DNA of 64,000 nt from Laetmonice hystrix (lineage: Eukaryota), in assembly GCA_965235115.1 (NCBI GenBank), contig OZ249449.1, forward strand, positions 11,408,001-11,472,000, given 5' to 3'. Shown here piece after piece: positions 4,069-57,652 of the stretch. The number at the start of each line of letters is the position of its first letter. Positions within the stretch are counted from its first letter, which is position 1. Both the position numbers and the translations under genes were made by a program. The notes under the pieces were generated by a model. The model made no database searches, had not been told where the DNA came from, and saw only the letters and a list, made by a program, of their open reading frames with translations.

Positions 4069-4908
4069 TGTGATTAGGTCCCTATGTACTCCACCTGGGT
4101 GAAACTGTCGTCAGGTCTTCGTGTCGTAAGTGCACAATATCGGCAACCACCAAAAACACCCCCCCCCCCCCACCCCACCCTTCCAAAACGGTCCTTGATT
4201 GACTGGGCCTATTAAGGCGTAATGTTTCCATTTTACCGCTACAGCATACGGTAATATTTCATGTAAGAAATCCCATCCCACAATTCTCTCCGCGGGATCA
4301 CGTGACCTTTAATTTCCCAGACGTCACATGCCAACCAACGGGTCTGAGCTACGCAATACGGTGCAGTCGGAGCACAACGCGCGCCTCTCTCCTGCTGGCT
4401 AGAGACGTCTATAGACCACGGTCACAACGCCACCAGATCAGACCATACACGCTAGCTAGAAGCTGTCGCTGGATATTTAGCCCACCTATCTCGACTTTCT
4501 TCGCTTCAGACAAAATAGCTTTTATTCCCGTTTTGAAATCCACGATTTCGAAACTGAGGAACCTGGAACAGGCGATGGATTATAGGGTCGGTTGAAATCG
4601 AGGAATATTTTTGAATCCTGTATAGCTTTCCGTGGTCCAGGCAGAAGAAAAAGGTTTAGACCCTACGCGTATGATCCAGCCACTGTACACTGTGTCTTCT
4701 TGTGATCTTAACCGGCATATCACGGGTGTTTGACCACACGAAGTACTAACTGACTGAAAACTTCGCGTTCTGAGGTGTGGTGTCGGGATTATTTTTGGAG
4801 CAACTGTTTTGTTAAACAACTAAAAGCAGCAAGAAAACCAAACTGTGATCTAACTGGAAAAAAATTAACAGGGCGAATTTGGTTGGCGGTCTTTAACCCT
4901 TGACGAGT

Positions 4909-6726
4909 ATGACAAATACCATGCCTTTTCTTGACATCGGAAATATATCAACGGATTTAGCAAGTTGCAATCACACCATGACCAACACAACATTTTGTGG
5001 GACGGAATCGCCTGGGGATACAGATGGACCCACTCCAAGCGCGTTTGCCCAGAGTTTTCGCTACGTCATCAATCGAATGGAAGTCTATTGGAACCCTATT
5101 GTCATCTTGCTTGGTATCGTTGGAAACACGACGTCGTTGGTGGTGTTTGTGCTGAGCCCTCTCCGGCGCATGTCCTGGTCTGTCTACCTGGCAGCGCTGG
5201 CCGTCTCCGATAGTGGCTTCCTGCTGGTGCTTCTGGCTTCCTGGGCCAACCACGTGGGTGTCAATATTTATCACACATGGGGTTGGTGCCAGTCACTGAC
5301 CTACGTCACCTACGTCTCCGCCTTCCTTTCCGTGTGGTACGTAATATTTCTGGTTGTCCATGGGGCCTTGTGGTTCAGTGGGGTTTTAAGCTCATTGCCC
5401 ACTAGGCGAGTGTTGCGAGCGCTTGAGACCACTTGCGGTACTCGAAGGGATTTTAAACATGTTGAAAACTTGGCGATCACCTGCGAGTCCCGGATCGCAA
5501 GTTTGTCATTGCGAGCACAATAGGTCGTTTGTCGTTTGTCACACACTAGGCGAGTGCTCGCAGCTGTGAAGGACTCGCATCGCTTACGAGTTTACTCGCA
5601 GGCGTTTACTGGCCTAGTGGACAATCAGCTTCCGTCATATGACAATGGCTGTTACAAAGGTGCCAAATCGTAATAGCACCCCTAAACGATAGGCCTACCT
5701 GGGTCCGTACCTGGGCTATTCGTCAAGCAACGCAAGAAACCTGCAATTGTCATTTTGTAAGTGGTTGTTTCCATCATAAAAACAAAATTGATGCCCTTCA
5801 ATCAGGGCCTAGTTCTACTCCAATATAATGCACTGCGTTCTTTTTCATAAGATCTTGTGTTATGACGTTGCAGGTACGTCGTAGCATTTACAACGGAACG
5901 CTACATCGTCGTCTGCTTTCCCCTACGCCGCATACACGTGACGTCATTAACGCGTTCTAAATTAGTCGTGGCGGGACTGACGGCGTTTGCTGTGATCGCA
6001 TACAGCTTCGCGCTGTGGACGTCTGGACTCCAACACATGCATGGGTCTGCTCATTTCTGCTCTCACCTAATGAAGTACAACTCGCTGCTTTATGTTCTGA
6101 CATACATTGACACCATCGCGACCCTTGTTGTTCCATTCATTGCAATTGTCCTCCTGAACAGTAGCATAATGTACACCGTCGTCTGCTATCATACCTGGTG
6201 GCAGTCGACGGTTATTGGCCAAGTCGACGACCGTCTTTCCGTCACTAACATGTCTGACACGACGTTATCAGAGCCAGTGACGTCTGTAAACATAAGGGGT
6301 CACAGACGCGCGCGTCTTAAAGGAACGCGGGATTCCGTGATGCGCATGACTAAAACTCTTGTCGTTGTGTCGAGTGTCTTCATCTTGCTGAACTTTCCGA
6401 GCCATGCCATCAAATCGTACATGTTTGTTGCTGAGCTGGCTGACCCGCTGTACATGCCATCTCATGTGCTGCAGACGTGCTTGAAGTTAGCACAACTAGT
6501 ATACAATGTCAATTTCGCCATCAACTTCCTACTCTACAGTGCATGTGGAAGCACCTTCCGACAAGCATTGCGTAGCCTCAGCATCCAAATGAACAATAAG
6601 ATAAGAGGATCTAAAGAGGCATACCTGAACAACAAAGAAACGGATGTGTTGCCGACAATGAGAGCAACTCGACTACAAAGTCAAACAATGACAACTGAGG
6701 TTCCCTTAAGAGTTATTGCGATTTAG
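4909..6726 (+). CDS. Class A (rhodopsin-like) orphan peptide-receptor-type GPCR, 426 aa, 2 exons
   Basis: Exons 4909-5336 and 5874-6726 (phase-2 intron GTACGT...TTGCAG). Joined protein has TM1 GN, TM2 LAVSD, TM3 C...TERY, TM6 FILLNFP, TM7 NFAINFLLY and N-glycosylation sites in the N-terminus. The NFxLY TM7 is typical of FMRFamide/sex-peptide/GPR139-like receptors. Alternative ATG at 4921. Confidence 0.92.
5388..5631. mobile_element. MITE-like element inside the GPCR intron
   Basis: ~24-bp imperfect TIRs (AAGCTCATTGCCCACTAGGCGAGT vs reverse complement of the right end AAGCTGATTGTCCACTAGGCCAGT, 3 mismatches); internal CACTAGGCGAGTG copy at 5544; no clear TSD. Confidence 0.6.
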
Positions 6727-7010
6727 ATTCCATGGCTGCCATGCTTCACCATGGACGGGAATCTTTGTTGCGATTATAGTGCAATACCTGGTTTAGTTAT
6801 AGAGACTGGCAACCTCCTACCCTAGAATGCAGTGTTAGTATTTTACTTATACTAGATCTGTTCCCAGTTGCCCGATACTAGGGGGTAAAATAGATGCCTT
6901 GGCTGAATTTATACTTTGTTTCTTGCATTTAATGTTCGGTATGGCTTTATGAAGCTGTAAGTGGATTCATCAGACTGTAACGACGGTAGTAAAGAATGCT
7001 ACCTATGCCT

Positions 7011-7075
7011 AGAGAGAGACAGAGATAAGAGACAGAGAGAGAGGAGGGAGGGAGACAGACAAAGAGAGACAGAGG
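7011..7075. repeat. Imperfect GA/GACA microsatellite
   Basis: Purine-rich run AGAGAGAGACAGAGATAAGAGACAGAGAGAGAGG... Confidence 0.85.
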
Positions 7076-7095
7076 AAATCCTTGAAAAAAATTGT

Positions 7096-7903
7096 CATCG
7101 GACATGTCTCGTATTAAGGTTATGTAAAAAGAATAGTTTGAAAACGTTCTGGTCCCAATCTCAAGTTTGGGATATCATCGACAAAACGCATTTCCCAAAA
7201 CGTGACCGAAAATAATCAATTCAGGTGGTGGAATCAGACTATACAAACATAAAATCCACCCAGTCAGTTTGTCTGCGAAATGGATCAGCTTGCTTTATAG
7301 TCGCTTTTCTGTTTTAATTTTTCGGGATTCGTACGTGTGTGCGGACCATGTCGTAAAGCTCTACATACACGTGCGACTGTTTAGTTGGCCGACTGCTCAC
7401 GACTCAATAGCCGCCCAGCATACACGCATCAACTATTTAGTCGTGTAAAGGGCAAATCTTAGTGAGATCAAGATAATCAACAGCTCCTTGTTGTATTATA
7501 CGTGTCAACAATGTACGATAATATTTCATTATATATAATACAAATAAATGTCTATGGTTTGTTGAATGATGTAAATTTTAATTAATCAAATTCTCGTTAG
7601 CAGTAGGGTATAATAAAGTAAACGATGTTAAAGAAAACCATTTTTTTCTGATTCTTTGCTGAATAAGATTTGCAGTTTCAGCGAAGGAGGATATTTAAAT
7701 ATTGAGTCAATTAGCACAAAATAATGTAAGATGTTTTTCTTCGAAAAGTGATAGGAACCACCATATGACCTCGCCTCAGGCCGGGCCAAATCCCTCTTGA
7801 TTGATCTCACATATCTGATTCTAGGAAAACTCCCATCGGAGATGTCTCGTATCAGGATTATGTAAAAATGTGATGGTTTTAAAACGTCCTGGTCCCACTC
7901 TCA
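7096..7903. repeat. Diverged ~68-bp direct repeat pair (7096-7163 and 7834-7903)
   Basis: CATCGGA(C/G)ATGTCTCGTAT...TATGTAAAAA...AAAACGT(T/C)CTGGTCCCA(A/C)TCTCA occurs twice about 740 bp apart. Confidence 0.7.
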
Positions 7904-8373
7904 GAGAGAGGAAGAGATAGAAAGAAATCAGCCCAATCAACAACAACAGCAAAGTTAAACAGAAAATAAGCGAGAATAAAAATAACACTTTTAAAAAGGA
8001 CGCTAACGATGTCTTTAAACTTGCCGAATCAAGGCTCTGAGTATACCTTTAAGTACTGTCCAGTAACCGGATTTGAGGGCGCCTATCCCACTTCAGGCTG
8101 CTTTGGTCAACTCCTACTGCTGGCTAATAGGGCCCCTAATGATGGCTCATCCGACCCCAGTGTGTAAAGGTGATAATAAACTTTTACCTGCTATAGATGT
8201 TCACATTTTTTCTGTAATCATTGCAAAGTTAAGAACAGCTTATGAATCTATCGTATGAATCTATTTGTGTTATTAGCTAATTCATTTAAGTAAAATAATC
8301 GGTCCCTGTTTGCAAGAAAAGGTTTAAAAGCAGGTTGTTTTTTTAAATCGTCATTTTGCTTCACGCACGTCCA

Positions 8374-11300
8374 CTATGGTTGTGATGATGGCGATGATGA
8401 TCTAACAGTGTTTTTTCTGAGCGGTACTGAGACGCCTCCTCCCCTGTTAAATACTGAAGAAGATTGGACAGGACTAGGTTGGATGTCAGTGATTGGCAAC
8501 ACGTGTGACATCAAACCATTAGACACATCGTCCTTGTCCTTGGCGCGGACTGACAATGACACAGGCCCCCAACCGGTAGTCTGTATCTCCTCTGTAGGAG
8601 ACACCGACATGTCAGACGCTATCCCAACCATTGTGCTCACACCAACGTCGATCCCAAATAGAAACGACGTCATCCGACTCAATCTGATGGTTTGGGTTGA
8701 CATTGAGTCTCTGGCTTTAAGAGGCGCATGCGTAGTAATTACTTTGCTCCTTTCGCGGGTCTGAACGGCCCCTGACAGTGGGTGGGACGGCGAAAGGTCA
8801 AGTGACGTAGAAACCTCGATGTCAAAGTAATTGGGGGAGAGAAGACTGATTAATTGCTCCGGAGTAAATGGAGATAGGTTTGTACGTCGGGGTTGGTCTT
8901 GTAAAACGAGCGTTCCAGTTGGTGAGATGGGGGTAATTAACTGGTTACCCTCAAAAGGGTGCAATATGTACCCTGATGATAAACCTGTATTTATCTGGGT
9001 TCTTTCAGTCTTTATATGTCCTCCTGGTGGCAAAGGAGCACACTGTGTTTGAACGGGTTGCCCGTCTTCACAAAGCGGGCATGGAGTTAGGGATAACGTG
9101 AATGGTTGCTTGGGATATCCCGAGGAATAGCAACGATTCGGCCAATCAGAGGTGATGGCCTTCGGGAGCTGTGCTCCCTCGGGAGTATCCAGACTTTTCG
9201 TTCCGCCCAATTCCAAATCTGTACCATTAGCTGAGAACGTGTCATTAAAGGTGGCAGATACTGTTGAATGAAGGAACTGGGAAGATATTGATATAGCGTC
9301 ACTAAAACCAGGCGACTGCTCTGTCAACCCCAATGTTCGGGATGAGGTATCCAAATTATTTTTGAAATGACTCATATGTTCAGTTTGAGTGCATGTGTGT
9401 CCGTGCCTACGACTCGAAGATCCCGTCCAGTCTTTATTAGCAGGGGTGTCATTTTGTTCTAATGGAACACTAGCGTCTAATACTGGAAGAACGGTCATTA
9501 GAGTAGGCGGCTGCGTAAAACCTGTAGAATGGCTGAAAGAAGCCTCTAGACTATTTGACGGGATGTGATGGCCAATGACGGGACGTGATGGCAGAGATGC
9601 CAGGAACGGGGACGTCTGTAGCGCAGTTAATCCATAAAACTCTCGCGACGTAACGGGGTTCTCGTTGTGTAGACCACGTGACGTGTGATCACGAGGCGGG
9701 CTGCTGAAAGTAGAGGGGTCCACGGTATCGGACGCCTCTCTCGTGAAGTAACTCGTAGACAATTCTATGGATGGATTCAACAGGAGCTCGGGTATCGCGT
9801 GGGGAGACCAAGGAGACTGTATTGAGTCAGGAACGTTCTGTCTTGGCGCATGGATGGTCTGTTGGGAAAAGTATAGTTTGTCATTCAACGATCGAGTGGC
9901 CATGCCCTGTAGGAGGCTAGGAGTATGACTTACGGTCGTTTGAGCGGCTTTGAATAAGTTTGAGACACCGTTACTTCCAAAGTTTTCACGCGTAGCCCCT
10001 AAGGACCATCCGTTGAAAATGTTTTTGTCGAAATGGACACCTTCATTGACCTGGCCAGAAGACGTTGGCCTTGACTTTGGCAGGGTCGAACGTAAATCTA
10101 TAAATTGCACCAGGGGGACAGTCTTATAATCATCCATGTCCTTCGTGGTAAACACAGCTTGACCATTGGAAAAACCATCAGCGTTTGATAAGTCAGCTCT
10201 ATTGTTTATTTCATGTCCCCATGATGCCGAATGTCCCGTTTTTATCGTGTCATCAATCAAAGGAACCAATGTCGTCTCAGGTAATTGGGACATAATAAAT
10301 AATGGCCCTTGTTTCGAGTCACTAATTGCACTTGTAAAATCATTTGTTGTCTGCATCTCGGTGTATTTACGTCTAATCACTCCTGATGACGTAGAAAAAG
10401 ACAGGTCTTTATCTTGGAATGGTAGAAGTTTTTCAGTGATCTTTGTCTGATCTGAATATTCATGATCAACAATGGACAGAAGACGCCTCCGTGGTGGAGC
10501 TGGGGTTTCAGCTATGAAGGGAGCGATTCCGCTCGGGGGTGGAGGCGGCCGTGCGGGTGGTACAGCAGCTGTTACTGTGGGTTTTACCACTGACGGAGGC
10601 TGGGCGATAATATGAGAAGTCGAGTGGGACAGGTCGTCTGACGTCATGGTGTCGTAGGCGTTCTGCCGCGCGGTGTGTTCGTATGACGTAAATGAGATTG
10701 ACGGTTGGATGACTGGTGAATAAACCGTAGACTGTGAATACATTAGGGATAGGTTTTCGCTCTGGGATATTTCAGTCTGGATAGAACTACCCAGAATTTG
10801 TGTTTGACTGGGAAATACAGAAGATCCTTCAGTTACTAATTGTGATGTGAGAGTAGATAATGCATCAGTCGGCGTCCTGAAATAAGAGACATCTCCGCTA
10901 GGAGCTCGAGACGCCATAATGTCACCATGCTCTACTTTATAGCTAGTTTGGAGTGCGCCAAGGTCATTCATGTTTGTGATATAGCTAGTTTGGAGTGCGC
11001 CAAGGTCATACGTGTTTGTGATATAGCTAGTTTGGAGTGCGTCAAGGTCATTCATGTTTGTGATATAGCTAGTTTGGAGTGCGTCAAGGTCATTCATGTT
11101 CGTGATATAGCTAGTTTGGAGTGCGTCAAGGTCATTCATGTTTGTGATATAGCTAGTTTGGAGTGCGTCGAGGTCATTCGTGTTTGTGATATAGCTAGTT
11201 TGGAGTGCGTCAAGGTCATTCATCTTTGTGATATAGCTAGTTTGGAGTGCGTCAAGGTCATTCATCTTTGTGATAAGAGGTTCCTGGTAAATAGGCCTAG

Positions 11301-14300
11301 TTGGTGATACCATTGTCGGATAAATGTCATTTCTGTGCGATTCAATATCTTCTTTACCAACACTTTGGAGTGTGTCATACTCGGGCGTCTTCGTCGTGAG
11401 AAACGGCAGATGACCAGTGGAACCCTGGCCTGGTGAGTTGTCCGGTGTGACCGTGAGAAATGGCAGATGACCAGTGGAACCCTGGCCTGGTGAGTTGTCC
11501 GGTGTGATCTTGACCTCTGAGCGACTTACTTCCGGTGGTGACGTGACTTCTCTCACAAGTTTGTCAGGTGGTGGTGTGGTCTGTTGATACGTGAGGGCGC
11601 CACTGGGCGTACCTAATGCAGCCTCATTTGGAGACTTACCGTTGCTGTTTTCCGAGAGTGAAGCTGTAAAAGAAAAAAAAACCAAAGTGCTAATTTGAGC
11701 CATTCTGCGAAATTCCTCGAAACCCCATTACAACAATGAGACGGCAAACAGGCCTCACTGTTCCGACATGCGAAGTGACAGTTTGGGATGATAGCACCAC
11801 CTCTGGGGATTGTATGAAGCCGGACAAGCGGTGTCATATCAGACAGGCTGGGTTAATTATTAATACAGCCGGCCGACAGTGCCTCGGCACGTCTAGATTG
11901 GAGTCGCCTAGGATTGAGTATGACAGACGGTGGATAATTCCCCCTTATCTGTATTCACAATTGGCTTATCAAAAGTATAACGTTAAGGCGACAAGAAAAG
12001 TTTTTTTTTCTTTATCATTATGCTTTTCGTCATCACCTGGACTGAGTAAGCATGTATAAAAACGATCTGTTTTCGACCTGATGATGGTCAAACCGTATCC
12101 GACATCATGACGTAAGACTTTCAAACCACCAGCAAAAGTAACTTCTCTAAATGTTCTGGTTCTGGGTTCCTAACTGGAAACATTCCGACACTTAACATGA
12201 CATATCCATGACGTCATTACGTTAGATGTAACAACACTTACGTCACGTACCGTTGACGGTTAAGAACGCGGTATGACGTTGGTTACTCATTAGTAATTCA
12301 CAGACGTAGGCGCCAGCGTCCTGCAGTTGCACGTCGCGGACCACCAAATTGAAGCGCCCCCGAACGGCGAATTTTGACGCGTTGGTTAAATTCCGCGGGA
12401 AACTTTGAAAAATAATCTCTCCGGAGAGTGGTCCGCCAGGGCACCTCCGAGTCCATCTGATTAGATCCTGGTGCTGGATGCTGAGGTCTGTCCCACAGGT
12501 GAAGTAGGCGTCATCACCTTGTGAAACGCTGGCGTCGAGAGGGGGTGTGTGTATAACAGGTAGACCTGGCAACAGATTATAGGCGTATGTGAAAGGATTA
12601 GGTGTATGGTAAGGAGCAGTATTTCTGAATATAATTTCAGTCACTTATTATGACGAAATTTCCTAAATTATTTTATTTTGAGGAAATATATCAATGTATT
12701 GATATGGACAACACAACGCAGATTATCAAGTATTAGTAATCTAGGCCTACTTGTAATTATGAATTTTAAGAATGAGTAATTAAAATAAAAAGTATAAGGA
12801 TATAAAAGAAAACTTATGGACGGCGTCCCATGAACCCTAGCTTATCGTGGTTTGCCTTTTGTGAAAGGTTTTAATTTTACTACATTTTATTTCTTTAAAT
12901 TATAACGGCATAGTGACTTACCTATTACCTTAAGTGTGGCGTTGTAACGTGTCATACTTAGCAACAACTCACACACATAGACGCCTTCGTCCTCTCGTGT
13001 CACATAATTTATCAGTAAGTTATGATGACCCCTCACTTCATATTTTCCGCGGACTGGGAGACTTTCTGGAGATTGTGAGGATTGATATAAAACCTGAACG
13101 CCGCCTCTGACGTATCTACTCCACCGGAGTACGTCACCAACACCAGGGGGCGTGACGTCATCGGGAACAGTGTTTTCGCACGTTAAAATCACGCTTTTAT
13201 TCAAGAGAACCGTCATTGCCCGGGGAGGTGATGTTATTCTTGCACTGAGATTTACTGAATTAAAGAAATTAACAGATACATACAATAAGGCGATACCAAA
13301 TATTTTGTAAATTTCAAAAGATACTAAAATAATATTGAATTCTTACATCGAACCACTCTGATGGTGTGACGTGCCGTTCCGCTTCTTGCCGTATCTACTC
13401 CGTGTTTTACAGTACATTCTATGTCATGAGTGTTAAAGTTACGAAACGGAGTCAGCCGCAATGTTTCCGCCACTAGATACGTCCCATCCCCGACCGCAAA
13501 CTCGGTTCGTTTCCTTGGGCTCCGCTCGGGGGCGCTCCGACCTACGAATCGCCAATGAAATGTGACATTGCCAGGGCTGACTCGGTTAGCGACACAAGTG
13601 ATGTTGGTCAAGGTGCCTTCAATGATGGGGTCCTGGAGGCCATGGATTTCAAGATGAGCGGGAGGTGGATCTGGAACATTCGAGGCCTTTGACATTAAAT
13701 AACCTTTTCTTGCCATAATCAAGATTATGGCAGGTGTACTTCTCCGGGCTGCTTTACTTTGTAGGGACCTATACGTCAGAAATGGCTGATTCTCTAGTAG
13801 CCTTGGAGTGATCACATTTTGGTACCCCGTACCATCTCATAAGTAGGTAGACTGGAGAAACTAGGGTAAGAAAAGTATCATTCCCTCTGTCTATCACATG
13901 TCAGCACTTTCTAGAACCGCTGATGTGCAATTTTGAGAAATCATTAAGTCCTATCGACCGTGGCTGTCGCACTCTTGGACCGTACATCAGTAATCCTCGC
14001 AGCTCTATGACATGCACACATAGTCGGCCTAAAATGACTTAGGTTTCCCATCAGGGGCGTCAGACGATGAACAAGCTAGTCGATTTAAGTCAATTTGAAG
14101 GTGCTCTGGCCCCCCGCATTATTACTCGGTAGTCATACCCCCCCCCCCCTGTCCCCCACCCCCGTGTAAGAAAATCTTGGGATACTTATAACATATTTAT
14201 GGTGGCCCTGTACAAGAAACCTACAGAAAACACGAAGCCTGACGTGTGTGAAGCGTGGCAGGCCTCCGTTCAGTAGAAAACACGTGTAGACCGAGTCCAT

Positions 14301-17105
14301 GTCTGCCTGGATTCTCTCCACCACGAGATCTCCAGTATGAGGATCGAGAGAGAACCCTCCGTACATCCCGGGTGGATGGCTGTCAGTTCTCCAAGTGAGG
14401 AAGGCCGGCCAGGGATAGCTGTAGGCGGAGACTGTCCCTCTCAACCACTCCAACATCCGGGTCGTTTCATCCAGACCGCCTCCACATGGTAGTCGAGCTG
14501 ACTCCCTGATGAATCCAGTCACCTCCACGTCAACTGTTACCATGGCAACGTAAAGGTAAAGAGACATTTATTGTTTTATTTTTGAAGATGTGTAATATTA
14601 GGCAAAAAAAAAATTCTTGTCCCCGCGCGCGTTACCTAAAAAACCCTGCGTCATGTATTTTTTTCCTGAAAAATCCAACTGATCCATATTTGTGGTGGCC
14701 AGTGCTGTGTCAGAACGTTGCAGAACGTTCTAAATTTTTATCTGAACGTTCGAAGATGACAAAGGTCGATGAATTTGCGAACGGCCGATATCTCTTTTCT
14801 TCTCTTTTACTGTTAAAGTTTCGATCAGCAGCCTGTCTTGTTCCACTGAACACCTTCCCGGTTATCTCTGCCAGCACGCGACATCAGTAAAAACCATGTA
14901 TTGGAACACATTCTGTTGTCAACATCGAGATATTGCAAATAACATGATAATAACACTATCGCGTTATTTATCATTCGACAACCAACACTCAATCTCACTA
15001 TAAAAATGTGGTATTCAGATGATGCAGTGACACTACGAATTTTCTGAAACATAACAATCAAATTCTATAATAATGGCACGCCTTTCTTTTCTACAAAATG
15101 GAGTTGGTCGCTAGTACCTGCAGTAGGTGTCTCAGTAAAAGGTCGTCCCTGATTGGTTCTCCCGGGTAGCACGTGCGGCGTGGTCGACACCGTGATACTG
15201 ACGTTGATGATTTCACCCCTATTGTTGTCCACTGCAGTCACGAGAGTCTCCCCGTCGTTTTGAGAAATGAAAACACTAACAATATCCTTCACTGCGAAGC
15301 AAAGCACAAATAAATACAAACACCTTGATTAAACATGTGCGTTCTTTTCATTACTCATTTTTAAATGAACGAAACAGACGGTTTCTACACAAATTGCGTA
15401 CTGATTAATGGGGATCCCAAACGACTGTTATAAAATCCAAATAAATTCGATTAGTCCGAATGACACTTAACACTAAGTAATATAAAACCTGGATAAGATT
15501 TCCAGTCTCCCCTTCATAAACTTCCATTGTCTCATCAAGTTTCTTTTTTTATCCGGAATAGCTTTATTAATTTTCTAAGGCATTCTTAGGAAGTATCTCT
15601 TCCGCGATTTCTTTCATTCATAGCGCTTTAATGTCTCAACTCCTCTACAACGCCCCCCCCCTACTCGATAACAAAAGCGAAATTTTCTGTTCTTTTTTTT
15701 TCTCAGTAAATATTAATATTTCTTAACACGCGATACATGCGGACTATACTCGCTGCATGCCAACGATCTGTCACAGTGCTTATAAATCAAGTTCGTTAAT
15801 TGTTTAGATGAAGAAAGGAAAGTCGTGTACGATTTACTCTTCCAAGAAATATTAAACAATAAACATTTCGTATTAATATTAATCAGAAATGTGAGCCTAC
15901 CAGAATGAAGCATGTGCACTAACCCAGTAGGTTGGTCATTATATATGATGACAGCCGTGGCTCCAGATTGGATTGCATGGACTACTTTTGTCTGCGAATA
16001 AATACCAAGAAAGCTGATTAAGTCATATATACTCACTGGACTTGGCCGATTCCATTAAGGAACAACCGAATTCTGCAGTTCAGTTGTATCATAATAACCT
16101 TTGTTACCATAGCAACTCCAGATGGGCAATGCCTTTATTGGAGACGACTTCTTACTTTGCTTGAAGAGAAACACTCTAATGACATGTGAGTCAATAATTA
16201 CAGTGACGTCGCCGTCTAATTGCTCTTGGTCTTCAGCAACATTAATAGAGTAGAGTAAAGTAGAAAGCAGTAGATAATTCGATAGTTTTGTTGCTATAAC
16301 TCTTAAGTAGAATAGCTAAAATACAACTCTGAAAGTGATGTGTTATAGAGTAGACTCTATTGAGAGCTCACTACTCTATCTAGTGTAGAATTAATACATG
16401 GACAGAACATTTGATAATATGATCTTAGATTACTTGGGTGTAGATCCTGAGAAAGGGGAGGGGTACATCCACATTACAGAAGATGGAGGATGGCCTATAT
16501 AATCACCCCCCCCCCTTCGCATTTAATTAAATTAGTGACAGTAGAGACCAGTTAGACCAGTTTAGAGGGCGCAAAGGAGAGGGAAGACAGTCTAGTATTA
16601 AGTCTATATTCAGATGTTTAAAAAAATATATAATATCCCTTCACTTTATGACAGCATTGGGATTTCTGTTTCAATTAGTATATCATTTTTCAGAAAGAAA
16701 ATATTTCGGTGGGTTTAGCCATTCCCATCCAGACTACACTGGCAACAAATTTACGCCACTGTTACATGAAATATGTCCTACCTGGAATGTACACCCACCA
16801 CGCTGCAGTAGCGCCACCCAGCGGAGTTGGGTGGCCGGAGCGTTTGTAATGGTCCCGCAGCCAGGCTGGATTCCGGGGTCAGACTGCACATGGTAAAGCA
16901 CACCCGAGTCTTCCTTTGGCTCGTTCCCATTGTCAAATGCCCCAAATATCGTCCTGGTTTGGTTCTGTAACGTGTACGTTATCGCTGCGATTTGCGTGTC
17001 GTAATCCTGACCACCAACACTAAACAGAGTTAGGCCAAAAAACGCCAGACACAGTCGGAAAATCCGTGAGCTACTGCCACGTAGGCCGATCGTTGCAATT
17101 TCCAT
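8374..17105 (-). CDS. Predicted secreted PA-domain / 4x immunoglobulin / mucin-like protein, 1719 aa, 8 exons
   Basis: Exons 17105-16782, 15991-15901, 15291-15118, 14533-14225, 13670-13347, 13254-12922, 12565-12251, 11663-8374; all GT-AG; phases 0,1,1,1,1,1,1 give one open frame (5160 nt). Signal peptide IFRLCLAFFGLTLFSVGG. PA motifs WVALLQRGGCTF / KVVHAIQSGATAVIIYND / KDIVSVFISQNDG. Ig motifs ARLPC-LEW-DSVYTC, TNITC-FHW-DIEC, VILTC-LRW-DEGVYVC, AYFTC-IRW-DAGAYVC. Ser/Thr/Pro-rich last exon. Confidence 0.8.
10939..11274 (-). repeat. Coding VNTR, 42-bp unit x8 (ITNMNDLDALQTSY)
   Basis: Eight in-frame 14-aa units read directly in the large exon. Confidence 0.97.
11392..11505 (-). repeat. Coding tandem duplication, 57 bp x2 (TPDNSPGQGSTGHLPFLT[V/T])
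   Basis: Two near-identical 19-aa units in the large exon. Confidence 0.95.
14536..14549. promoter_or_regulatory. RFX X-box-like palindrome GTTACCATGGCAAC at the Ig1 exon acceptor
   Basis: Matches the X-box consensus GTTNCCATGGNAAC; adjacent to the acceptor AG (14534-14535). Function not shown. Confidence 0.35.
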
Positions 17106-51895: not shown

Positions 51896-51909
51896 GCGCC
51901 ATCTAGCGG
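51896..51909 (-). promoter_or_regulatory. CTCF-like motif CCGCTAGATGGCGC just before the Vangl ATG
   Basis: Consensus-type CTCF core 15 bp upstream of the start codon. Confidence 0.45.
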
Positions 51910-51924
51910 AGGAACCCTTGCACC

Positions 51925-54900
51925 ATGGATCTAGAGTCTGTCCGTTCGGGGCGGAGTGAGCGCTCAGAGCGATCACAACGCAGCGCTCACAGCTCCCGAC
52001 ACCGCAGTAAGCACGGAAACGGAAGTCGGGATCGTGGAGATAGAGAATCACGCAGTCGTCATGACGACCGAGAACGCGATCCCGAGAGAGAGGAACGGTC
52101 AGTTCGAATAAAAGCACCGCCACAGCAACAAAACTACAACCACAATGGTGGCAACGGAAACGGCCATCCTACGCAGGCCACACAGGAAGTGGTCGGTGAA
52201 AATGGAGAACGCATCGAAGTGCAAATTATATCTCAGGATGACAACTGGGGGGACAATACAACAGCAATCACAGGAAACACAAGCGAAACAGGATTCTCAA
52301 TGGAAGATATGTCACGTATTACTAAAGACATGGAAGAAAGCATTGGATTTAACTGTGCGCGTTATGCAGGCTCCATCATGGCCGCCATCTTGGCTGTGGT
52401 GGCGTTCTTGTCGCCGGTCGTCATGGTGATTCTACCTAAACTCTTGCCTAAGTGGCAGATAGAAAACTGCAATGAAGCCTGTAAGGAGAGGCAGAAATGT
52501 GGACCCGAGTGTGAGGGTCTCTTCATTAGCCTGGCGTTCAAATTGTTGATTCTCTTGATAGGTACATGGGCATTGTTTGTGCGCCGACCAAAAGCAACAA
52601 TGCCGAGAATCTTCATCCTTCGCGCGCTTGTTCTATTTCTAGTGTTTGTTCTCACATTTGCATACTGGCTTTTCTACGGTGTTCGCATCTATGAAAGTGC
52701 AGAGCAAAACTACCACTCCATTGTGCAGTTCGCAGGATCCCTTGTGGATGCGTTGCTGTTCATCCACTATGTGGCTGTTATTCTGTTAGAGTTACGCCAA
52801 GTTGCGCCACAGTATGTGGTACAGATAGTTAGGTCACCGGATGGTGATACCCGCCACTATTCAGTCGGTCAGCTCAGCATACAGAGGTTGGCCGTATGGT
52901 GTTTAGAAAACTATTATCGTGACTTCCAGGTGTATAACCCATACCTTGACAATCTGCCTCGCAGGACGCCCAAACTATCGGGCTTTAAGTTTTATGACGT
53001 AGATGGGGTGACTAATAACACCCCTGCGAGTCGATCCCGGGCGATATTTGCAGCAGCCGCCAGGAGGCGAGATTCGAGTCACAATGACCGATTCTATGAA
53101 GAACAAGAGTATGAGAGGAGGGTACGGAAACGAAAAGCAAGGTTGATAGTTGCTGCGGAGGAGGCGTTCACTCATATCAAACGAATGCAGGAGGAGCAAG
53201 GTAAGTCATGTCAAGACAATATTTTATTTAGTAGTTGAAATATTCACAGATTTTCACCTTGATTAATCGCCAACATTCACAAGGGGTTATTGGATTATTT
53301 GTAATTATCTCATGACACGATATCAATAAGATAACATGACAGAGGGCATTTCTGAGGGAGACCTGTCCCCAGTTTTTTAAAATTTAAAATTTCGAAAAAT
53401 TGAAGCTTAACACGGATTGGCTGGTCTAAAGAGATCAGGGCCCAGTTCGTAAAAACTTAAGATCGTGCTTAAGCTTCAGCTTAACGCTTCTGATTGGCTG
53501 GTCTGACAATCAGGAGCGTTAAGCTTTAGCAAGAACTTAAGTTTTCAAAATAGGGCTCTTGGCCATTACCCACTCTCCATCCATCTGAACTTATCCATCG
53601 ACTGGGGAGGATTAAACGGGCCGTTGTTTGATGAGGCATCATGACGAGCACGGACGCTGAGTGTTGCCATGGTACCTGTGATGGTTACCACGTGCTGCCC
53701 AGAGACTGGGACCGGTGCACAGTGAGCATATGGCGGGTGTCTGGGGAAGTGGGTCTGCCACAAACAATGCTGATGAGGATTGTGATGAATCACCCCGATA
53801 CCTAAGCGTGATGAATGGCGCAATCAGCGACGTTCAGCGCATGCGCAGCTCGAAGTTATCTTCCCGGCAACAACAGCGATCAGTCTATATCATCTTTATG
53901 GATCTATTAATGCCCCAGCGTAGCTTTGATCATGGAGGCAGAGAGGCGGAAAACAGGGTGAATATTCAAGGGAGACGTGATTGAACCGTTTCGATGTCGG
54001 CGATAATAGGGAAGAACTGTTTAGATGAATGTTTACGGAAGTATTAGGAGGGGTGTGTCAGTGCGGAGACGTAATGAGTGGAAAGTTGGCATTGGAAGTC
54101 ATTCTCACAGAAACTCATGCTTGCGTCATCGCGTTTGATTGGTTCGTAAAAATAGATGGCAAAGTCTCGGGACCTTGAAGAAAAGGCCCCTAAAATTGGA
54201 AATGGAGATTTGTCAGTATTGTTAATAAAGCGTTATAGACAAATGATGTATGATGTACGTTCGGTCCCTGGTGAGAATTTACATATAAGTAAAATCAGGA
54301 TTAAGCAATCATCATATTGAAATGAAAGTTCTCAAATTAGATAACATTCCTGAAAACTTGTCTTAATTTGCTAATAGTTTGGATTGTTGGAGTCGCGCAG
54401 CAAAATGCAATGTCCAGCTAACCGAGTTAGTGCATGAAAAAAGGTGAGATTTTTTGAATGGTGGGATGGGAGATGGGGAGGGGGGGTAAAAAGGCAACAG
54501 GTGAGGAAACAACATGGCCATGTGGCCCTACTTTTTCATGCGTGATGACACATTCCATGCCAGCAGGGGCCGAGGTACTGAGGTCCGTAATTACTTGGTG
54601 AACAGCTGTGTGGTGTATTCTGGGGCAACAGTCTGCACTCTGCCATGGCTGAGTAGGAGGGAACAGTCCGTGTTGGAAGGGGGGGCCTCCATCAGGGTTA
54701 GGAGCGACTGGGTGAGTGGGTGTGTGTGTGGGGGGGGGGGGGGAGACAGCTGGTGTGGGTTAAAAACGAATCACGATTCAAGGAGAGATTTACCCCGAAG
54801 CGAGTTGCTCGAAAGTTTCTTGAAACGATGCAGTGTAAAATAGAATTTCAGTGTGGAGGGCATCAGCAAATATACTGAATCTAGATATCTGTATAGATAC

Positions 54901-57652
54901 TATTACAGAATTATATCCAAGTGCAGTTAGAATATCTCCCACCCTCACAGTCAGGGAGGGGTTGGGATGGTGGCGACTCCATAACAAGGTTGAACAGGTC
55001 ATGTGTTACCCAGGTGATTGAGAAGGAGAGATACTGATTGGCGTGCAGTCTGACAAATTACAAGTCATTAAAACCTAAGCGGTACTTCAGAGGAAACCTC
55101 TGTCCCAGCGAGCTCATCTGTCTGCCATTTGACTAACTCCAGACATGACCACTAGAGGGGGTGTCGGTACCGGCCCCAGTATATTAGATAGCGGGTGGAT
55201 TAGATTTACCCAGTACCGAGTGGCCTGGCCCGTGTTTCTGAAGCGAACCGACCCTAGGGCTAGCACCATGTTCAGAGTAACTAACTCACACATAAAGTAT
55301 AGGAACCACTGAGATTGAAAACCCTACACACAGGACAGAGGTTATAGAATATAAATCATGCAAGACCACCGTTTCCTTTATAAACGATGTTTGGCTCCAA
55401 AGTTGAAACCAAGTCAAGCGGGGTATGGAAAATAATCAAAATAAAATCGAGTGGGAATTATTTACATGTGTACGTGTATATTGAAAAAGGTGTTTTGCTG
55501 GATTCGATTTGAAAAATGAGTTGCCTCAAGGCGATACTCATTGACTTTCCTGCCACAAAATGTATTTTGTGTGCCACTATAAAGCTCGCCTATGTTTGTA
55601 ACAGAACTCAAGAGGGTGTTTGGTATCTGGGTGATGACCTGGTGGGGTGGGGCTGGGTTTTAGAAGTGAACTTTGGATCCTTGTTGGGAGACCACTGGAA
55701 GTGATAGGTAGGACGGATTGATTCGTAGTATCACATCCTACCAGCCCATGGACTTCAAAGCGACCGTTGGCGTGATAGTCGTCCGTTAGGGGTCTTGCCC
55801 AGGACACAGTTGAACTCTCCAACTGTGGAGTCATGTTTATATAGGCAGGGGTGGATCCAGGATAGTTTCAAACGTTGGATATTAGTTCCTGAAAACCTTC
55901 ACGTGAGGTTATATTCGTATCTAGGAATGTCTAAAAAAAATACAGAAAACCTATTGTACAGGAAATGTTATAGTGTTTCTCCCTTAGAAATAATTGAAAC
56001 GAAAGACAGCAAAATTCTTTAAAAAAGGATTTCAGGAAGGACGGATCCCTTGAAGTCCCTTCCTTTTGGGTGGAGGAAAAAGTCTTGGTTTGAAGTGTGC
56101 ATAGATATTTTGGAAAGAGCTCTAGAAAGGAAAAGGGTAAATACAAGGTGATTTCTGTTGTAGCCACGATTGTATTTCACCCTCCCACCCCATACAATCC
56201 CCAGAGACCAGTACATCGTTATCAGAGAGCAGGCCCCAGATGATTTAGGGACCCGATCACAGGGGTCAGAACCAGACAACCTCACAGGGCAGATAAGATA
56301 CCACCGCTCCCCACCAGGTGGTGCTAAGTATCTTATCTACTGGGCGGTGTTCAGATTGGTCTCTGTGGCCACCGACGCCTGAGTATGGGCTGAGGGGGCG
56401 GCTGGGGGCAACTAATATAATCATGTAATCTGTGTGTGGGGCTGATACGGGAGATGATATACCAGTGGTCAGATATCAGTTGGCGGTAAGCGGTCAGTGC
56501 TGACGATAGCAACGTCGGTAAGAAGGTTGCTATGCTTTCAGACCTGACTGACGAATCCATGGAAGATCTTGCTGAACAATTCTGTATATATATAACACCC
56601 CTTGAGCTGCTCAGACAGTGTGGCTGAGAGAAACTGCTGCAGCTGATTCTCATGTTGTGTGTCCTAAGATTTTACCGGGTACCTTTTAGATGCTTTTAAA
56701 ACAGTTCCTTTTTACTTTGAAAAGTAAACGGATCTTTTTGAGTAAAAAATACCCAGTAAAGTCAGGCCTGCAGAAGAACTTGCATTTGTCTGGGATTAAG
56801 CCTGACGATTCTGATTGGCAGGTCTACTCAGAGCAGCAAATCAGAAGCAATATTTTTAAGCAAGATCTTAAAGGCCCAATGTATACTTTGAACGCCGTGT
56901 ACAGGAGAGTGGCGCCCCCTGGATATCGGTCTCAAGTCGGTGGGCTGTTCTATTATGTGGGGAACTATGTTCTGTGCGGAGGTACACTCCCGGTGCTAAA
57001 CACGCACACAACACCCCGGGCCGTGCGAGGCTGCATTGAGCAGAGTAGGTTATTTATAGAACAGTCAACCGACATCCAGGGGGCGCCACTCTCTTAGACA
57101 CGGCGTTCAAATTATACAGTGGGCCTTTAAATTTTCAAAAAACCTGGGCCAGGAATCACACTTCATAAACTGTGATGTGTTTTTTACGGAGAGAAATGTA
57201 ATGTATTGTTTGGGTGTGTTTTAGGTCCAGCCATCCCGATGGACCCCACAGAGGCAGCCCAAGCGATCTTCCCTTCCATGGCGCGCACCTTACAGAAGTA
57301 CCTGCGAATCACACGCCAGCAGCCCAAGTACACGATGGAGAACATCCTGGAGCACTTAGCCTGCTGTGTGGCCCACGACATGTCACCCAAGTCGTTCCTC
57401 CAGCGTTACCTGGTGACAGGTCCCATCATCTACAGCGACAAGGACTACCGTGATACACAGACGTGGGTCGTCATCTGTGACCAGCTCCTGTCACGGTCCA
57501 TTGAACACGGCACCATCTTCCAGCTAAGACAGGGCGAGGTGCTGCTTCTAATCTCGGTTCGCAGACTGCCCCACTTTAACTTGACAGAGGAAGTCATCGA
57601 CCCCAAGGTCAACAAGTTTGTCCTCCGTCTCAACTCAGAGACCTCCGTCTGA
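51925..57652 (+). CDS. Vangl: Van Gogh / Strabismus planar cell polarity protein (Vang-like), 567 aa, 2 coding exons
   Basis: Exons 51925-53200 and 57225-57652 (phase-1 intron GTAAGT...TTTTAG). Motifs DDNWGDNTTAITGNTSETGFS, four hydrophobic TM segments, YYRDFQVYNPYL, EYERRVRKRKARLIVAAEEAFTHIKR, MDPTEAAQAIFPSMAR and the C-terminal PDZ-binding ETSV. Confidence 0.97.
53439..53557. mobile_element. Harbinger-like MITE of the CCAAT-palindrome family
   Basis: Degenerate TIRs GGCCCAGTTCGTAAAAACTTAAG / CTTAAGTTTTCAAAATAGGGCT; internal TTAACGCTTCTGATTGGCTGGTC shared with copies at 58301 and 59932. Confidence 0.6.
56311..56324 (+). promoter_or_regulatory. CTCF-like motif CCACCAGGTGGTGC
   Basis: Near-consensus core in the Vangl coding intron. 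Confidence 0.4.
56872..57126. mobile_element. Kolobok-like MITE, 255 bp, nested in an older MITE
   Basis: 59-bp TIRs (56872-56930; 57068-57126; 6 mismatches), AG...CT termini, TTAA TSD at 56868-56871 and 57127-57130. Confidence 0.85.

What the first reader, a model, noticed from the sequence alone, without database searches (positions are those of the whole stretch)
8374..17105. Goliath-type PA domain fused to four Ig domains and a mucin tail in place of TM-RING
Seen: exons 1-3 encode a signal peptide and a PA domain with hallmark motifs of the Goliath/RNF130/RNF13 E3-ligase ectodomain (WVALLQRGGCTF, A..GA.AVIIYN, DIVSVFI...G). They join in frame to four Ig exons and a ~1100-aa S/T/P-rich exon. 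Established: in that family PA is followed by a TM helix and RING-H2 and serves substrate recognition; plant VSR/RMR receptors use PA to bind sorting signals; PRADC1 is PA alone. I do not know a PA-Ig4-mucin architecture. The 584-bp intron between the PA and Ig1 exons shows no TM/RING exon and no separate signal-peptide exon, which supports one gene. Inference: a lineage-specific chimera that reuses an E3 recognition module as an extracellular or mucosal binding or decoy protein.
Basis: partly seen in the sequence, partly recalled or inferred. Interest (0 to 1): 0.82.

Follow-up and report, generated by a model that had tools for sequence, protein, structure and literature searches.

The report
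Secreted PA–four-Ig protein with orphan tail
An invertebrate gene appears to join the outer "grip" domain of a membrane ubiquitin-ligase family to four antibody-like domains and a long floppy tail. It is an unusual but not revolutionary new domain combination, and it still lacks transcript proof.

Summary
On the minus strand, eight exons (17105→8374) join through canonical GT-AG sites into one 1,719-codon frame with no stop. They encode a signal peptide, a PA domain (3 exons), four Ig exons (all phase 1-1) and a 1,096-aa tail.

- **PA domain:** the spliced domain matches Goliath/GRAIL-type PA proteins over its whole length (E=2e-28; family HMM 127 bits). It shares one intron position and phase with the genome's canonical PA-TM(-RING) genes.
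- **Break point:** exon 3 stops exactly where the paralogues run on into the TM helix. The 64-kb window holds no TM or RING relic.
- **Selection:** haplotype differences in exons 1-7 are 11 synonymous to 3 non-synonymous (P≤4e-4), so the exons are constrained coding sequence.
- **Tail:** it is a maintained ORF (0 stops against 35-89 in the other frames). It is only 33% S/T/P, has no homologue and is not a classical mucin.

Corrections: the nearest PA relatives include RING-less PA-TM proteins, and "WVALLQRGGCTF" is a generic PA motif also found in a bacterial subtilase.

Not shown: splicing of PA to Ig (no RNA runs exist), orthologues (none found) and function. My verdict is a probable real, lineage-restricted chimeric gene with a new architecture of known domains. 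Interest is moderate.

The parts
16782..17105 (-). Exon 1: start codon (G at -3, G at +4), signal peptide (aa 1-32) and N-terminal half of the PA domain up to '...RGGCTFQ'. Ends in phase 0 with donor GTAGGA.
   Evidence: 35-39% identity to three PA exons elsewhere in the genome. 40-45% identity to Goliath-type PA fragments in the 1.84-billion-protein library. Atlas neighbours are all PA clusters.
15901..15991 (-). Exon 2: PA core strand/helix ('...AIQSGATAVIIYN...'). Ends in phase 1. The intron before it is absent from the paralogues. The intron after it is shared with them.
   Evidence: Pfam PA 20.6 bits on these 30 aa alone; intron comparison.
15118..15291 (-). Exon 3: C-terminal part of the PA domain ('VKDIVSVFISQNDGE...') plus a linker. 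Ends in phase 1 at donor CAG|GTACTA, at the point where the paralogues' exon continues into the TM helix.
   Evidence: Single copy in the genome.
14225..14533 (-). Exon 4: Ig1, V-like, phase 1-1, Cys213-Trp226-Cys281.
   Evidence: Pfam Ig_3 16.4 bits, sub-threshold. Hallmark residues present. The single-sequence AF2 model was uninformative, pLDDT 38. 5 synonymous / 1 non-synonymous haplotype differences.
13347..13670 (-). Exon 5: Ig2, constant-type Ig domain, phase 1-1, with 'C-x-V-x-H' after the second Cys.
   Evidence: Pfam C1-set 28 bits against cut-off 21. AF2 pLDDT 71 with a 7-strand sandwich. Foldseek top hits are SYG-2 D4, MHC-II and CH3 constant domains, RAGE and B7-H3. About 19 related exons in the genome, mostly on the same chromosome.
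12922..13254 (-). Exon 6: Ig3, V-set, phase 1-1.
   Evidence: Pfam V-set 36.1 bits against cut-off 26. 43% identical to Ig4.
12251..12565 (-). Exon 7: Ig4, V-set, phase 1-1.
   Evidence: Pfam V-set 29.6 bits against cut-off 26. Best paralogue elsewhere is only 35% identical. No database homologue.
8374..11663 (-). Exon 8: 1,096-aa Ser/Thr/Pro-rich tail and stop codon. No TM helix, no hydrophobic C-terminus, no Pfam domain.
   Evidence: 0 stops against 35-89 in the other frames, and codon-usage LLR favours this frame. No homologue in 5.8 billion clusters. Unique in its own genome apart from repeat noise. The atlas does not recognise it.
10938..11275 (-). 42-bp x 8 in-frame tandem repeat (14-aa unit 'ITNMNDLDALQTSY') inside the tail. 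A second 57-bp x 2 repeat lies at 11395-11507.
14605..14731 (.). 127-bp high-copy repeat insertion inside intron 3 (the PA-Ig1 intron), polymorphic in the sequenced sample. The allele without it bridges both sides and confirms contiguity of the assembly.
   Evidence: depth about 7,000-9,700 at 14552-14748, and a joint 14604->14732 in three runs.

Best explanation
This is one real, single-copy, lineage-restricted gene for a secreted glycoprotein of about 1,719 aa. Its order is signal peptide, PA domain, V-like Ig, constant-type Ig, two V-set Ig domains, then a 1,096-aa disordered Ser/Thr/Pro-rich tail with no membrane anchor. The 5' part descends from a PA-TM(-RING) gene of the Goliath/GRAIL clade by DNA-level partial duplication, because the family's intron is retained. 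The copy was cut off just before the TM helix by a new phase-1 donor, which splices in frame to phase-1 Ig exons (shown: anatomy; inferred: history). Inferred function: an extracellular binding or adhesion protein. The PA domain, which serves as the luminal/extracellular recognition module in its relatives, would act as a ligand-binding head. The Ig domains and a probably O-glycosylated, extended tail would present or tether it in matrix or mucus.
For: Eight exons with GT-AG sites give one open frame, with the Ig exons all phase 1-1. Introns are of uniform size, 92-790 bp. The spliced PA matches a Pfam-verified PA-TM protein across all three exons (38% over 172 aa, E=2e-28) and a PA-TM-RING-H2 protein (E=1e-20). 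A family HMM built without it scores 126.9 bits. The best named PDB relative is the RNF128/GRAIL PA domain. The intron position and phase are shared with paralogues ('...H x |G-TG = VK...'), whose exon then continues into the TM helix. There is no TM or RING in 64 kb. Haplotype differences are 11 synonymous to 3 non-synonymous in exons 1-7, P=3e-5 to 4e-4. That includes three third-position changes spaced 3 nt apart in Ig1, and 4 synonymous to 2 non-synonymous in the PA exons. The tail frame is maintained. There are nine N-x-S/T sites and paired cysteines in the PA and Ig domains. No plausible alternative signal-peptide exon with a good donor was found. Independent contigs confirm the assembly across the PA-Ig intron.
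Against: No transcript evidence of any kind: all public runs that hold the locus are DNA contigs of one sample. The exon 3 donor (GTACTA) is the only one in the gene without G at +5. Two AATAAA signals (14580, 14572) and an in-frame ATG (14567, 'MSLYLYVAMVT...') lie just upstream of Ig1, so separate PA-only and Ig-tail transcripts are conceivable. No orthologue was found, and in a relative whose neighbouring GPCR is 66% identical no long ORF is called in the syntenic 10 kb. Conservation of the architecture is therefore unshown. The PA copy sits on a very long branch. Function is pure inference.
Confidence: 0.65

Rival explanations
1. There are two transcription units or isoforms. One is a short secreted PA-only protein: exons 1-3, reading 17 codons into intron 3 to a stop and using the AATAAA signals near 14575. 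The other is an Ig4-tail protein transcribed from a promoter in intron 3 and started at ATG 14567.
For: Weakest donor of the gene at exon 3. AATAAA x2 and an in-frame ATG with a short hydrophobic N-terminus just before Ig1. PA-only secreted proteins exist (PRADC1, established knowledge). Selection on both halves is equally compatible with this model.
Against: Only about 460-580 bp would have to hold a terminator, a promoter and a 5'UTR. 'MSLYLYVAMVT' lacks a charged n-region and is a poor signal peptide. The Ig1 exon starts at a proper AG acceptor in phase 1, matching exon 3's phase-1 donor. Intron 3 is the same size as its neighbours.
Confidence: 0.2
2. It is a non-functional relic: a partial duplicate of a PA-TM gene that landed beside an Ig gene. 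The apparent joint frame is fortuitous and one or both halves are decaying.
For: No homologue for the tail or Ig4. Very long PA branch. The atlas does not recognise the tail. No expression data.
Against: No stop or frameshift in 1,719 codons. Strong excess of synonymous polymorphism. The tail has 0 stops against 35-89 in other frames. The start codon, signal peptide, both PA cysteines and all Ig cysteine pairs are intact.
Confidence: 0.07

Closest known systems
Goliath/GRAIL family of PA-TM-RING-H2 E3 ligases (RNF128, RNF130, RNF149, RNF150; Drosophila goliath/godzilla)
   Same: Signal peptide plus a PA domain, collinear from the N-terminal 'A-x-I-T-Y-T' strand to '...DIVSVFI..DGE...I.V'. Both conserved cysteines are present. 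One intron is shared in position and phase with this genome's members. The best PDB match is the RNF128 PA domain.
   Different: No TM helix and no RING-H2, so it cannot be an E3 ligase. The 'NAS' glycosylation motif before 'AVVIYN' is replaced by 'SGAT'. There is an extra intron after 'CTFQ' and a 7-residue loop deletion. Identity is only 31-41%, on a long branch.
RING-less PA-TM proteins (unnamed): P0003 (complete 278-aa ORF on a 1,135-nt contig of a JGI environmental sample, with no introns) and the two-exon paralogue at G000:C1:41.07 Mb
   Same: They are the nearest relatives of this PA domain by identity (41% and 40%) and fall in the same weakly supported tree group.
   Different: They keep the TM helix and a short cytoplasmic tail and have no Ig domains.
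PRADC1 (PAP21), a secreted PA-only protein
   Same: A soluble, secreted PA domain without TM or RING.
   Different: The PA here is not of that type. The genome's PRADC1/EDEM3-like PA exon (C5:10.725 Mb) gives no alignment to its PA core. PRADC1 has no Ig domains or tail.
Ig-plus-mucin-stalk adhesion molecules (MAdCAM-1, TIM family; from established knowledge, not tested here)
   Same: N-terminal Ig domains followed by a long Ser/Thr/Pro-rich, presumably O-glycosylated segment.
   Different: Those proteins are membrane-anchored and have no PA domain. There is no sequence homology. The tail here is only 25% Ser+Thr.
PA inserts of subtilases and M28 aminopeptidases
   Same: The generic PA core: 40% identity over 85 aa to a bacterial subtilase, including 'LLQRGGCTFQ'.
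   Different: Only the core aligns (55 bits against 98-127 bits for Goliath-type). There is no peptidase domain.

Membership tests
PA domain (Pfam PF02225) | Match to the curated HMM above the gathering score (23.9 bits) | tested here: inconclusive
   Only single exons could be submitted by reference. Exon 2 (30 aa) alone scores 20.6 bits, E=4.8e-4, and exons 1 and 3 alone score nothing. The spliced domain has no reference, so it was not sent to Pfam.
PA domain (Pfam PF02225) | Significant full-length similarity to proteins that pass the Pfam PA threshold | tested here: met
   blastp against P0003 (Pfam PA 42.5 bits) gives E=2e-28 over 172 aa, and against P0009 E=1e-20. Against a bacterial subtilase PA insert E=4e-13, and a family HMM scores 126.9 bits.
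Goliath/GRAIL PA-TM-RING E3 ligases | Signal peptide and Goliath-type PA ectodomain | tested here: met
   shared intron position and phase.
Goliath/GRAIL PA-TM-RING E3 ligases | Transmembrane helix after the PA domain | tested here: not met
   No 19-residue window above Kyte-Doolittle 1.6 anywhere; the two windows above 1.5 are the signal peptide and a 1.52 stretch in the tail that includes charged residues. Exon 3 ends where the paralogues' TM begins.
Goliath/GRAIL PA-TM-RING E3 ligases | Cytoplasmic RING-H2 finger | tested here: not met
   No RING-H2 pattern in six frames of 64 kb. tblastn with TM-RING parts found only exon 3. The same regex finds the RING of the canonical paralogue on C4.
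Immunoglobulin superfamily | Ig-domain HMM above threshold and a Cys...Trp...Cys core | tested here: met
   Ig2 (C1-set), Ig3 (V-set) and Ig4 (V-set) are above the Pfam cut-offs. The Ig2 model is a 7-strand sandwich matching constant Ig domains. Ig1 is sub-threshold but has the Cys/Trp/Cys spacing, and its fold prediction was uninformative.
Mucins / mucin-like domains | Dense Pro/Thr/Ser region, usually in tandem repeats, serving as an O-glycan scaffold | tested here: inconclusive
   S+T 24.6% and P 8.6% over 1,096 aa. The only sizeable tandem array (14 aa x 8) has 3 S/T per unit. O-glycosylation is not testable here. No vWD, SEA or CysD domains.
PRADC1-type secreted PA proteins | PA domain alone, PRADC1-type sequence | tested here: not met
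   Different architecture, and no alignment of its PA core to the genome's PRADC1/EDEM3-like PA exon.

The most novel reading that the evidence does not exclude
The protein is a soluble decoy or adaptor that carries the recognition domain of the PA-TM(-RING) family outside the cell. It would compete for, or bridge, the ligands of the membrane-bound relatives, as R-spondin-type extracellular regulators act on ZNRF3/RNF43. That would make it an extracellular regulator of a membrane ubiquitin-ligase/sorting system, built by exon shuffling onto an Ig scaffold.
Probability: 0.08. Interest if true: 0.7.

Novelty: new variant of a known kind. Interest (0 to 1): 0.38.

Why it matters
If the transcript is confirmed, this is a clean natural example of exon shuffling. 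The breakpoint can be read at nucleotide level: an inherited intron, a new donor at the ectodomain/TM border, and phase-1 compatibility with Ig exons. It would also show that the Goliath-type PA domain can work as a free-standing extracellular module. That would give a handle on what this poorly understood domain binds. It opens no long-standing question, and domain shuffling is common in invertebrate genomes.

Tried and rejected
- **RNA evidence:** two run searches, with the gene and with the broadly expressed VANGL neighbour, found only DNA contigs of one sample. Read laying therefore gave assembly and polymorphism data, not splicing.
- **Orthologues by search:**
  - The exon 1 search of 1.84 billion representatives gave only 14 hits, none above 45% identity.
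  - The tail search and the Ig4 search of 5.8 billion clusters found nothing.
  - The metagenome scan returned only a bacterial subtilase.
- **Orthologues by synteny:** The called genes there include no long ORF, so the result is inconclusive.
- **Paralogous Ig-tail gene:** none found. The best Ig4 relative is 35% identical on C21 with no other matching exon, and a V-C pair at C19:12.92 Mb is only weakly similar.
- **TM/RING relic in intron 3 or elsewhere in the window:** none.
- **Alternative signal exon:** only candidates with poor donors.
- **Structure:** the AF2 model of Ig1 from a single sequence was useless, pLDDT 38.
- **Other checks:** the atlas search on the tail gave no usable hit. 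A literature search for PA plus Ig architectures found nothing relevant. PRADC1-type ancestry was rejected.
- **Tree placement** of the PA copy is unresolved: long branch, supports of 80-87.
Full report
**1. Observation**

The window is eukaryotic DNA: chromosome-scale contig C19 of a 627-Mb genome. Reading the minus strand from 17160 to 11560, I placed eight exons:

- 17105-16782
- 15991-15901
- 15291-15118
- 14533-14225
- 13670-13347
- 13254-12922
- 12565-12251
- 11663-8374

Every intron is GT...AG. The joined sequence is 5,160 nt, giving 1,719 codons and a terminal stop with no internal stop. The four Ig exons are all phase 1-1, the usual pattern for Ig-domain exons. Exon 3 ends in phase 1, so the PA-to-Ig1 junction (15118→14533) is in frame. 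Introns measure 790, 609, 584, 554, 92, 356 and 587 bp.

**2. The PA domain**

Only single exons can be passed to the curated libraries by reference. Exon 2 (30 aa) alone scores 20.6 bits on Pfam PA, just under the 23.9 cut-off.

- Residues 20-178 align to P0003 at 38% identity, E=2e-28, across all three exons. P0003 is a 278-aa PA-TM protein with Pfam PA at 42.5 bits.
- Residues 35-173 align to P0009, a PA-TM-RING-H2 protein, at E=1e-20.
- An HMM built from 15 family members, without the query, scores 126.9 bits over residues 17-171.
- The best named solved structure for the family, and the only one hit by exon 1, is the RNF128/GRAIL PA domain 3ICU.
- The PA core also aligns to a bacterial subtilase PA insert (40% over 85 aa, 55 bits). 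That insert carries 'LLQRGGCTFQ'.

So that motif is generic to PA domains. The Goliath-type assignment rests instead on three things. One is the N-terminal extension ('AAITYT...G.F..G....G.L.HVQ'). Another is the C-terminal 'VKDIVSVFISQNDGE...INVSITV' segment. The third is the higher scores. The genome's PRADC1/EDEM3-like PA exon on C5 gives no alignment to its PA core.

**3. How the gene was built**

The genome holds three canonical relatives.

- **C4:14.00 Mb:** exon 1 has the signal peptide and PA up to '...TMKHQ'. Exon 2 starts 'VK...', finishes the PA domain and runs straight into the TM helix. RING-H2 exons follow ('...[32 protein letters not shown]').
- **C4:19.03 Mb and C1:41.07 Mb:** these have the same first intron. 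On C1 the second exon ends with a TM helix, a short tail and a stop, with no RING. P0003 is likewise a complete RING-less ORF.

In the gene under study, intron 2 lies at exactly that inherited position and phase ('...MLHS' + G | TG = 'VK...'). Intron 1, after 'CTFQ', is an extra. Exon 3 stops 57 codons in, at the linker where the relatives continue into the TM helix. The window holds no trace of TM or RING coding sequence.

I read this as a DNA-level partial duplicate of a PA-TM(-RING) gene. It was truncated at the ectodomain/TM border by a new donor and spliced to Ig exons. This history is inferred. The copy is old or fast-evolving: it is 31-41% identical to all relatives, has the second-longest terminal branch in the tree, and groups only weakly (80/85) with the RING-less proteins.

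**4. Ig domains and tail**

- **Pfam:** Ig2 is C1-set (28 bits), Ig3 is V-set (36 bits) and Ig4 is V-set (29.6 bits), all above cut-off. Ig1 is sub-threshold.
- **Ig hallmarks:** each exon has the Cys pair 60-69 residues apart, with the core Trp 13-19 residues after the first Cys.
- **Ig2 fold:** the model (pLDDT 71) is a seven-strand sandwich. Its best structural matches are constant-type domains: SYG-2 D4, MHC class II, CH3, RAGE and B7-H3.
- **Ig1 fold:** the single-sequence model was uninformative.
- **Tail composition:** 1,096 aa with S 13.4%, T 11.2% and P 8.6%. It has five cysteines, no TM and no hydrophobic C-terminus.
- **Tail repeats:** a 42-bp x 8 array and a 57-bp x 2 array.
- **Tail relatives:** no Pfam domain, no homologue in 5.8 billion clusters, no paralogue apart from repeat noise, and no recognition by the protein atlas.
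- **Tail coding status:** its frame has 0 stops against 35-89 in the other five frames, and codon usage favours it.

The tail is therefore a maintained coding sequence. It is best described as a long, probably disordered and O-glycosylated orphan tail, not a classical mucin.

**5. Is it a working gene, and is it one gene?**

No RNA run exists for this organism. The four runs that hold the locus are DNA contigs of one sample. They confirm the assembly. They also show that intron 3 carries a polymorphic 127-bp high-copy repeat (14605-14731), and the allele without it bridges both sides.

The haplotype differences give a useful test. Within exons 1-7 there are 14 differences, 11 synonymous and 3 non-synonymous. 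About 25-31% synonymous would be expected under neutrality, so P = 3e-5 to 4e-4. They include three third-position changes spaced 3 nt apart in Ig1. The PA exons alone give 4 to 2, and the Ig exons 7 to 1. Both halves are therefore under purifying selection in the modelled frame.

Evidence for a single unit:
- Phase and frame continuity.
- Uniform intron sizes.
- A proper acceptor before Ig1.
- No alternative signal-peptide exon with a credible donor.

Evidence against:
- The exon 3 donor (GTACTA) is the gene's weakest.
- Two AATAAA signals and an in-frame ATG (14567) lie just upstream of Ig1.

A PA-only plus Ig-tail pair of transcripts therefore cannot be excluded. I put the single-gene model at about 0.65.

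**6. Distribution**

No orthologue was found by any route. The databases do hold contigs of relatives whose conserved genes are 60-72% identical. The gene thus looks lineage-restricted, although eukaryote coverage in these databases is thin. The only named GPCR homologue is from the polychaete Paralvinella palmiformis, which is a weak hint that the animal is an annelid or another lophotrochozoan.

**7. Mechanism and comparison**

Shown: a signal peptide, no membrane anchor, nine N-glycosylation sequons in the PA and Ig part, and paired cysteines. These indicate a secreted glycoprotein.

Inferred from the family: in the PA-TM-RING ligases the PA domain is the luminal/extracellular recognition module. 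Here it would be a soluble ligand-binding head on an Ig scaffold, with an extended tail that may tether it in matrix or mucus. It is not a member of the E3 family, because the TM and RING features were tested and not met. It is homologous only in the PA domain.

I know of no PA-Ig architecture and found none in the literature search. A proper architecture search could not be run. I class it as a new variant of known kinds, of moderate interest.

Noticed in passing
G000:C1:41.07 Mb (loci L002, L009) and protein P0003 (locus L018): A group of RING-less relatives of the Goliath family. They are two-exon genes encoding signal peptide, PA, a TM helix and a short cytoplasmic tail ending in a stop. 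P0003 is a complete 278-aa ORF on a 1,135-nt contig of a JGI environmental sample. They are the nearest relatives of the PA domain studied here, and I do not know them as a named family.
   Followed up: partly
window 14552-14748 (insertion 14605-14731): A high-copy short repeat (contig depth about 7,000-9,700 against about 30-70 around it) sits in the PA-Ig1 intron. It is polymorphic: an allele lacking 127 bp is present in three runs of the same sample.
   Followed up: partly
G000:C19, clusters at 2.52-2.56 Mb and 13.07-13.15 Mb, plus 12.92, 16.6 and 24.35 Mb: About 19 exons related to the constant-type Ig2 exon (27-38% identity), mostly on the same chromosome as the gene. This suggests a locally expanded family of C-type Ig domains, or large multi-Ig genes.
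   Followed up: no
window 4897-5520 and 5866-6723 (+): A two-exon rhodopsin-type GPCR (Pfam 7tm_1 on its homologues) ends 1.65 kb from the stop codon of the gene, convergent with it. The best database relative is 66% identical, and the only named one is from the polychaete Paralvinella palmiformis.
   Followed up: partly
window 51907-53235 and 57176-57649 (+): A Vang-like/Strabismus planar-polarity gene with most of its coding sequence in one 443-codon exon and the C-terminal '...ETSV' PDZ-binding end in a later exon. The atlas score to Vang-like clusters is 0.94.
   Followed up: partly
window 14572-14585 (-): Two overlapping-range AATAAA hexamers and an in-frame ATG (14567) lie immediately upstream of the Ig1 acceptor. 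They could allow a PA-only transcript or an internal start.
   Followed up: partly
locus L021 (metagenome contig Ga0299906_10001503): A 66% GC bacterial subtilase whose PA insert carries 'LLQRGGCTFQ', nearly the same decapeptide as the animal protein. This is a reminder that the motif is generic to PA domains.
   Followed up: yes
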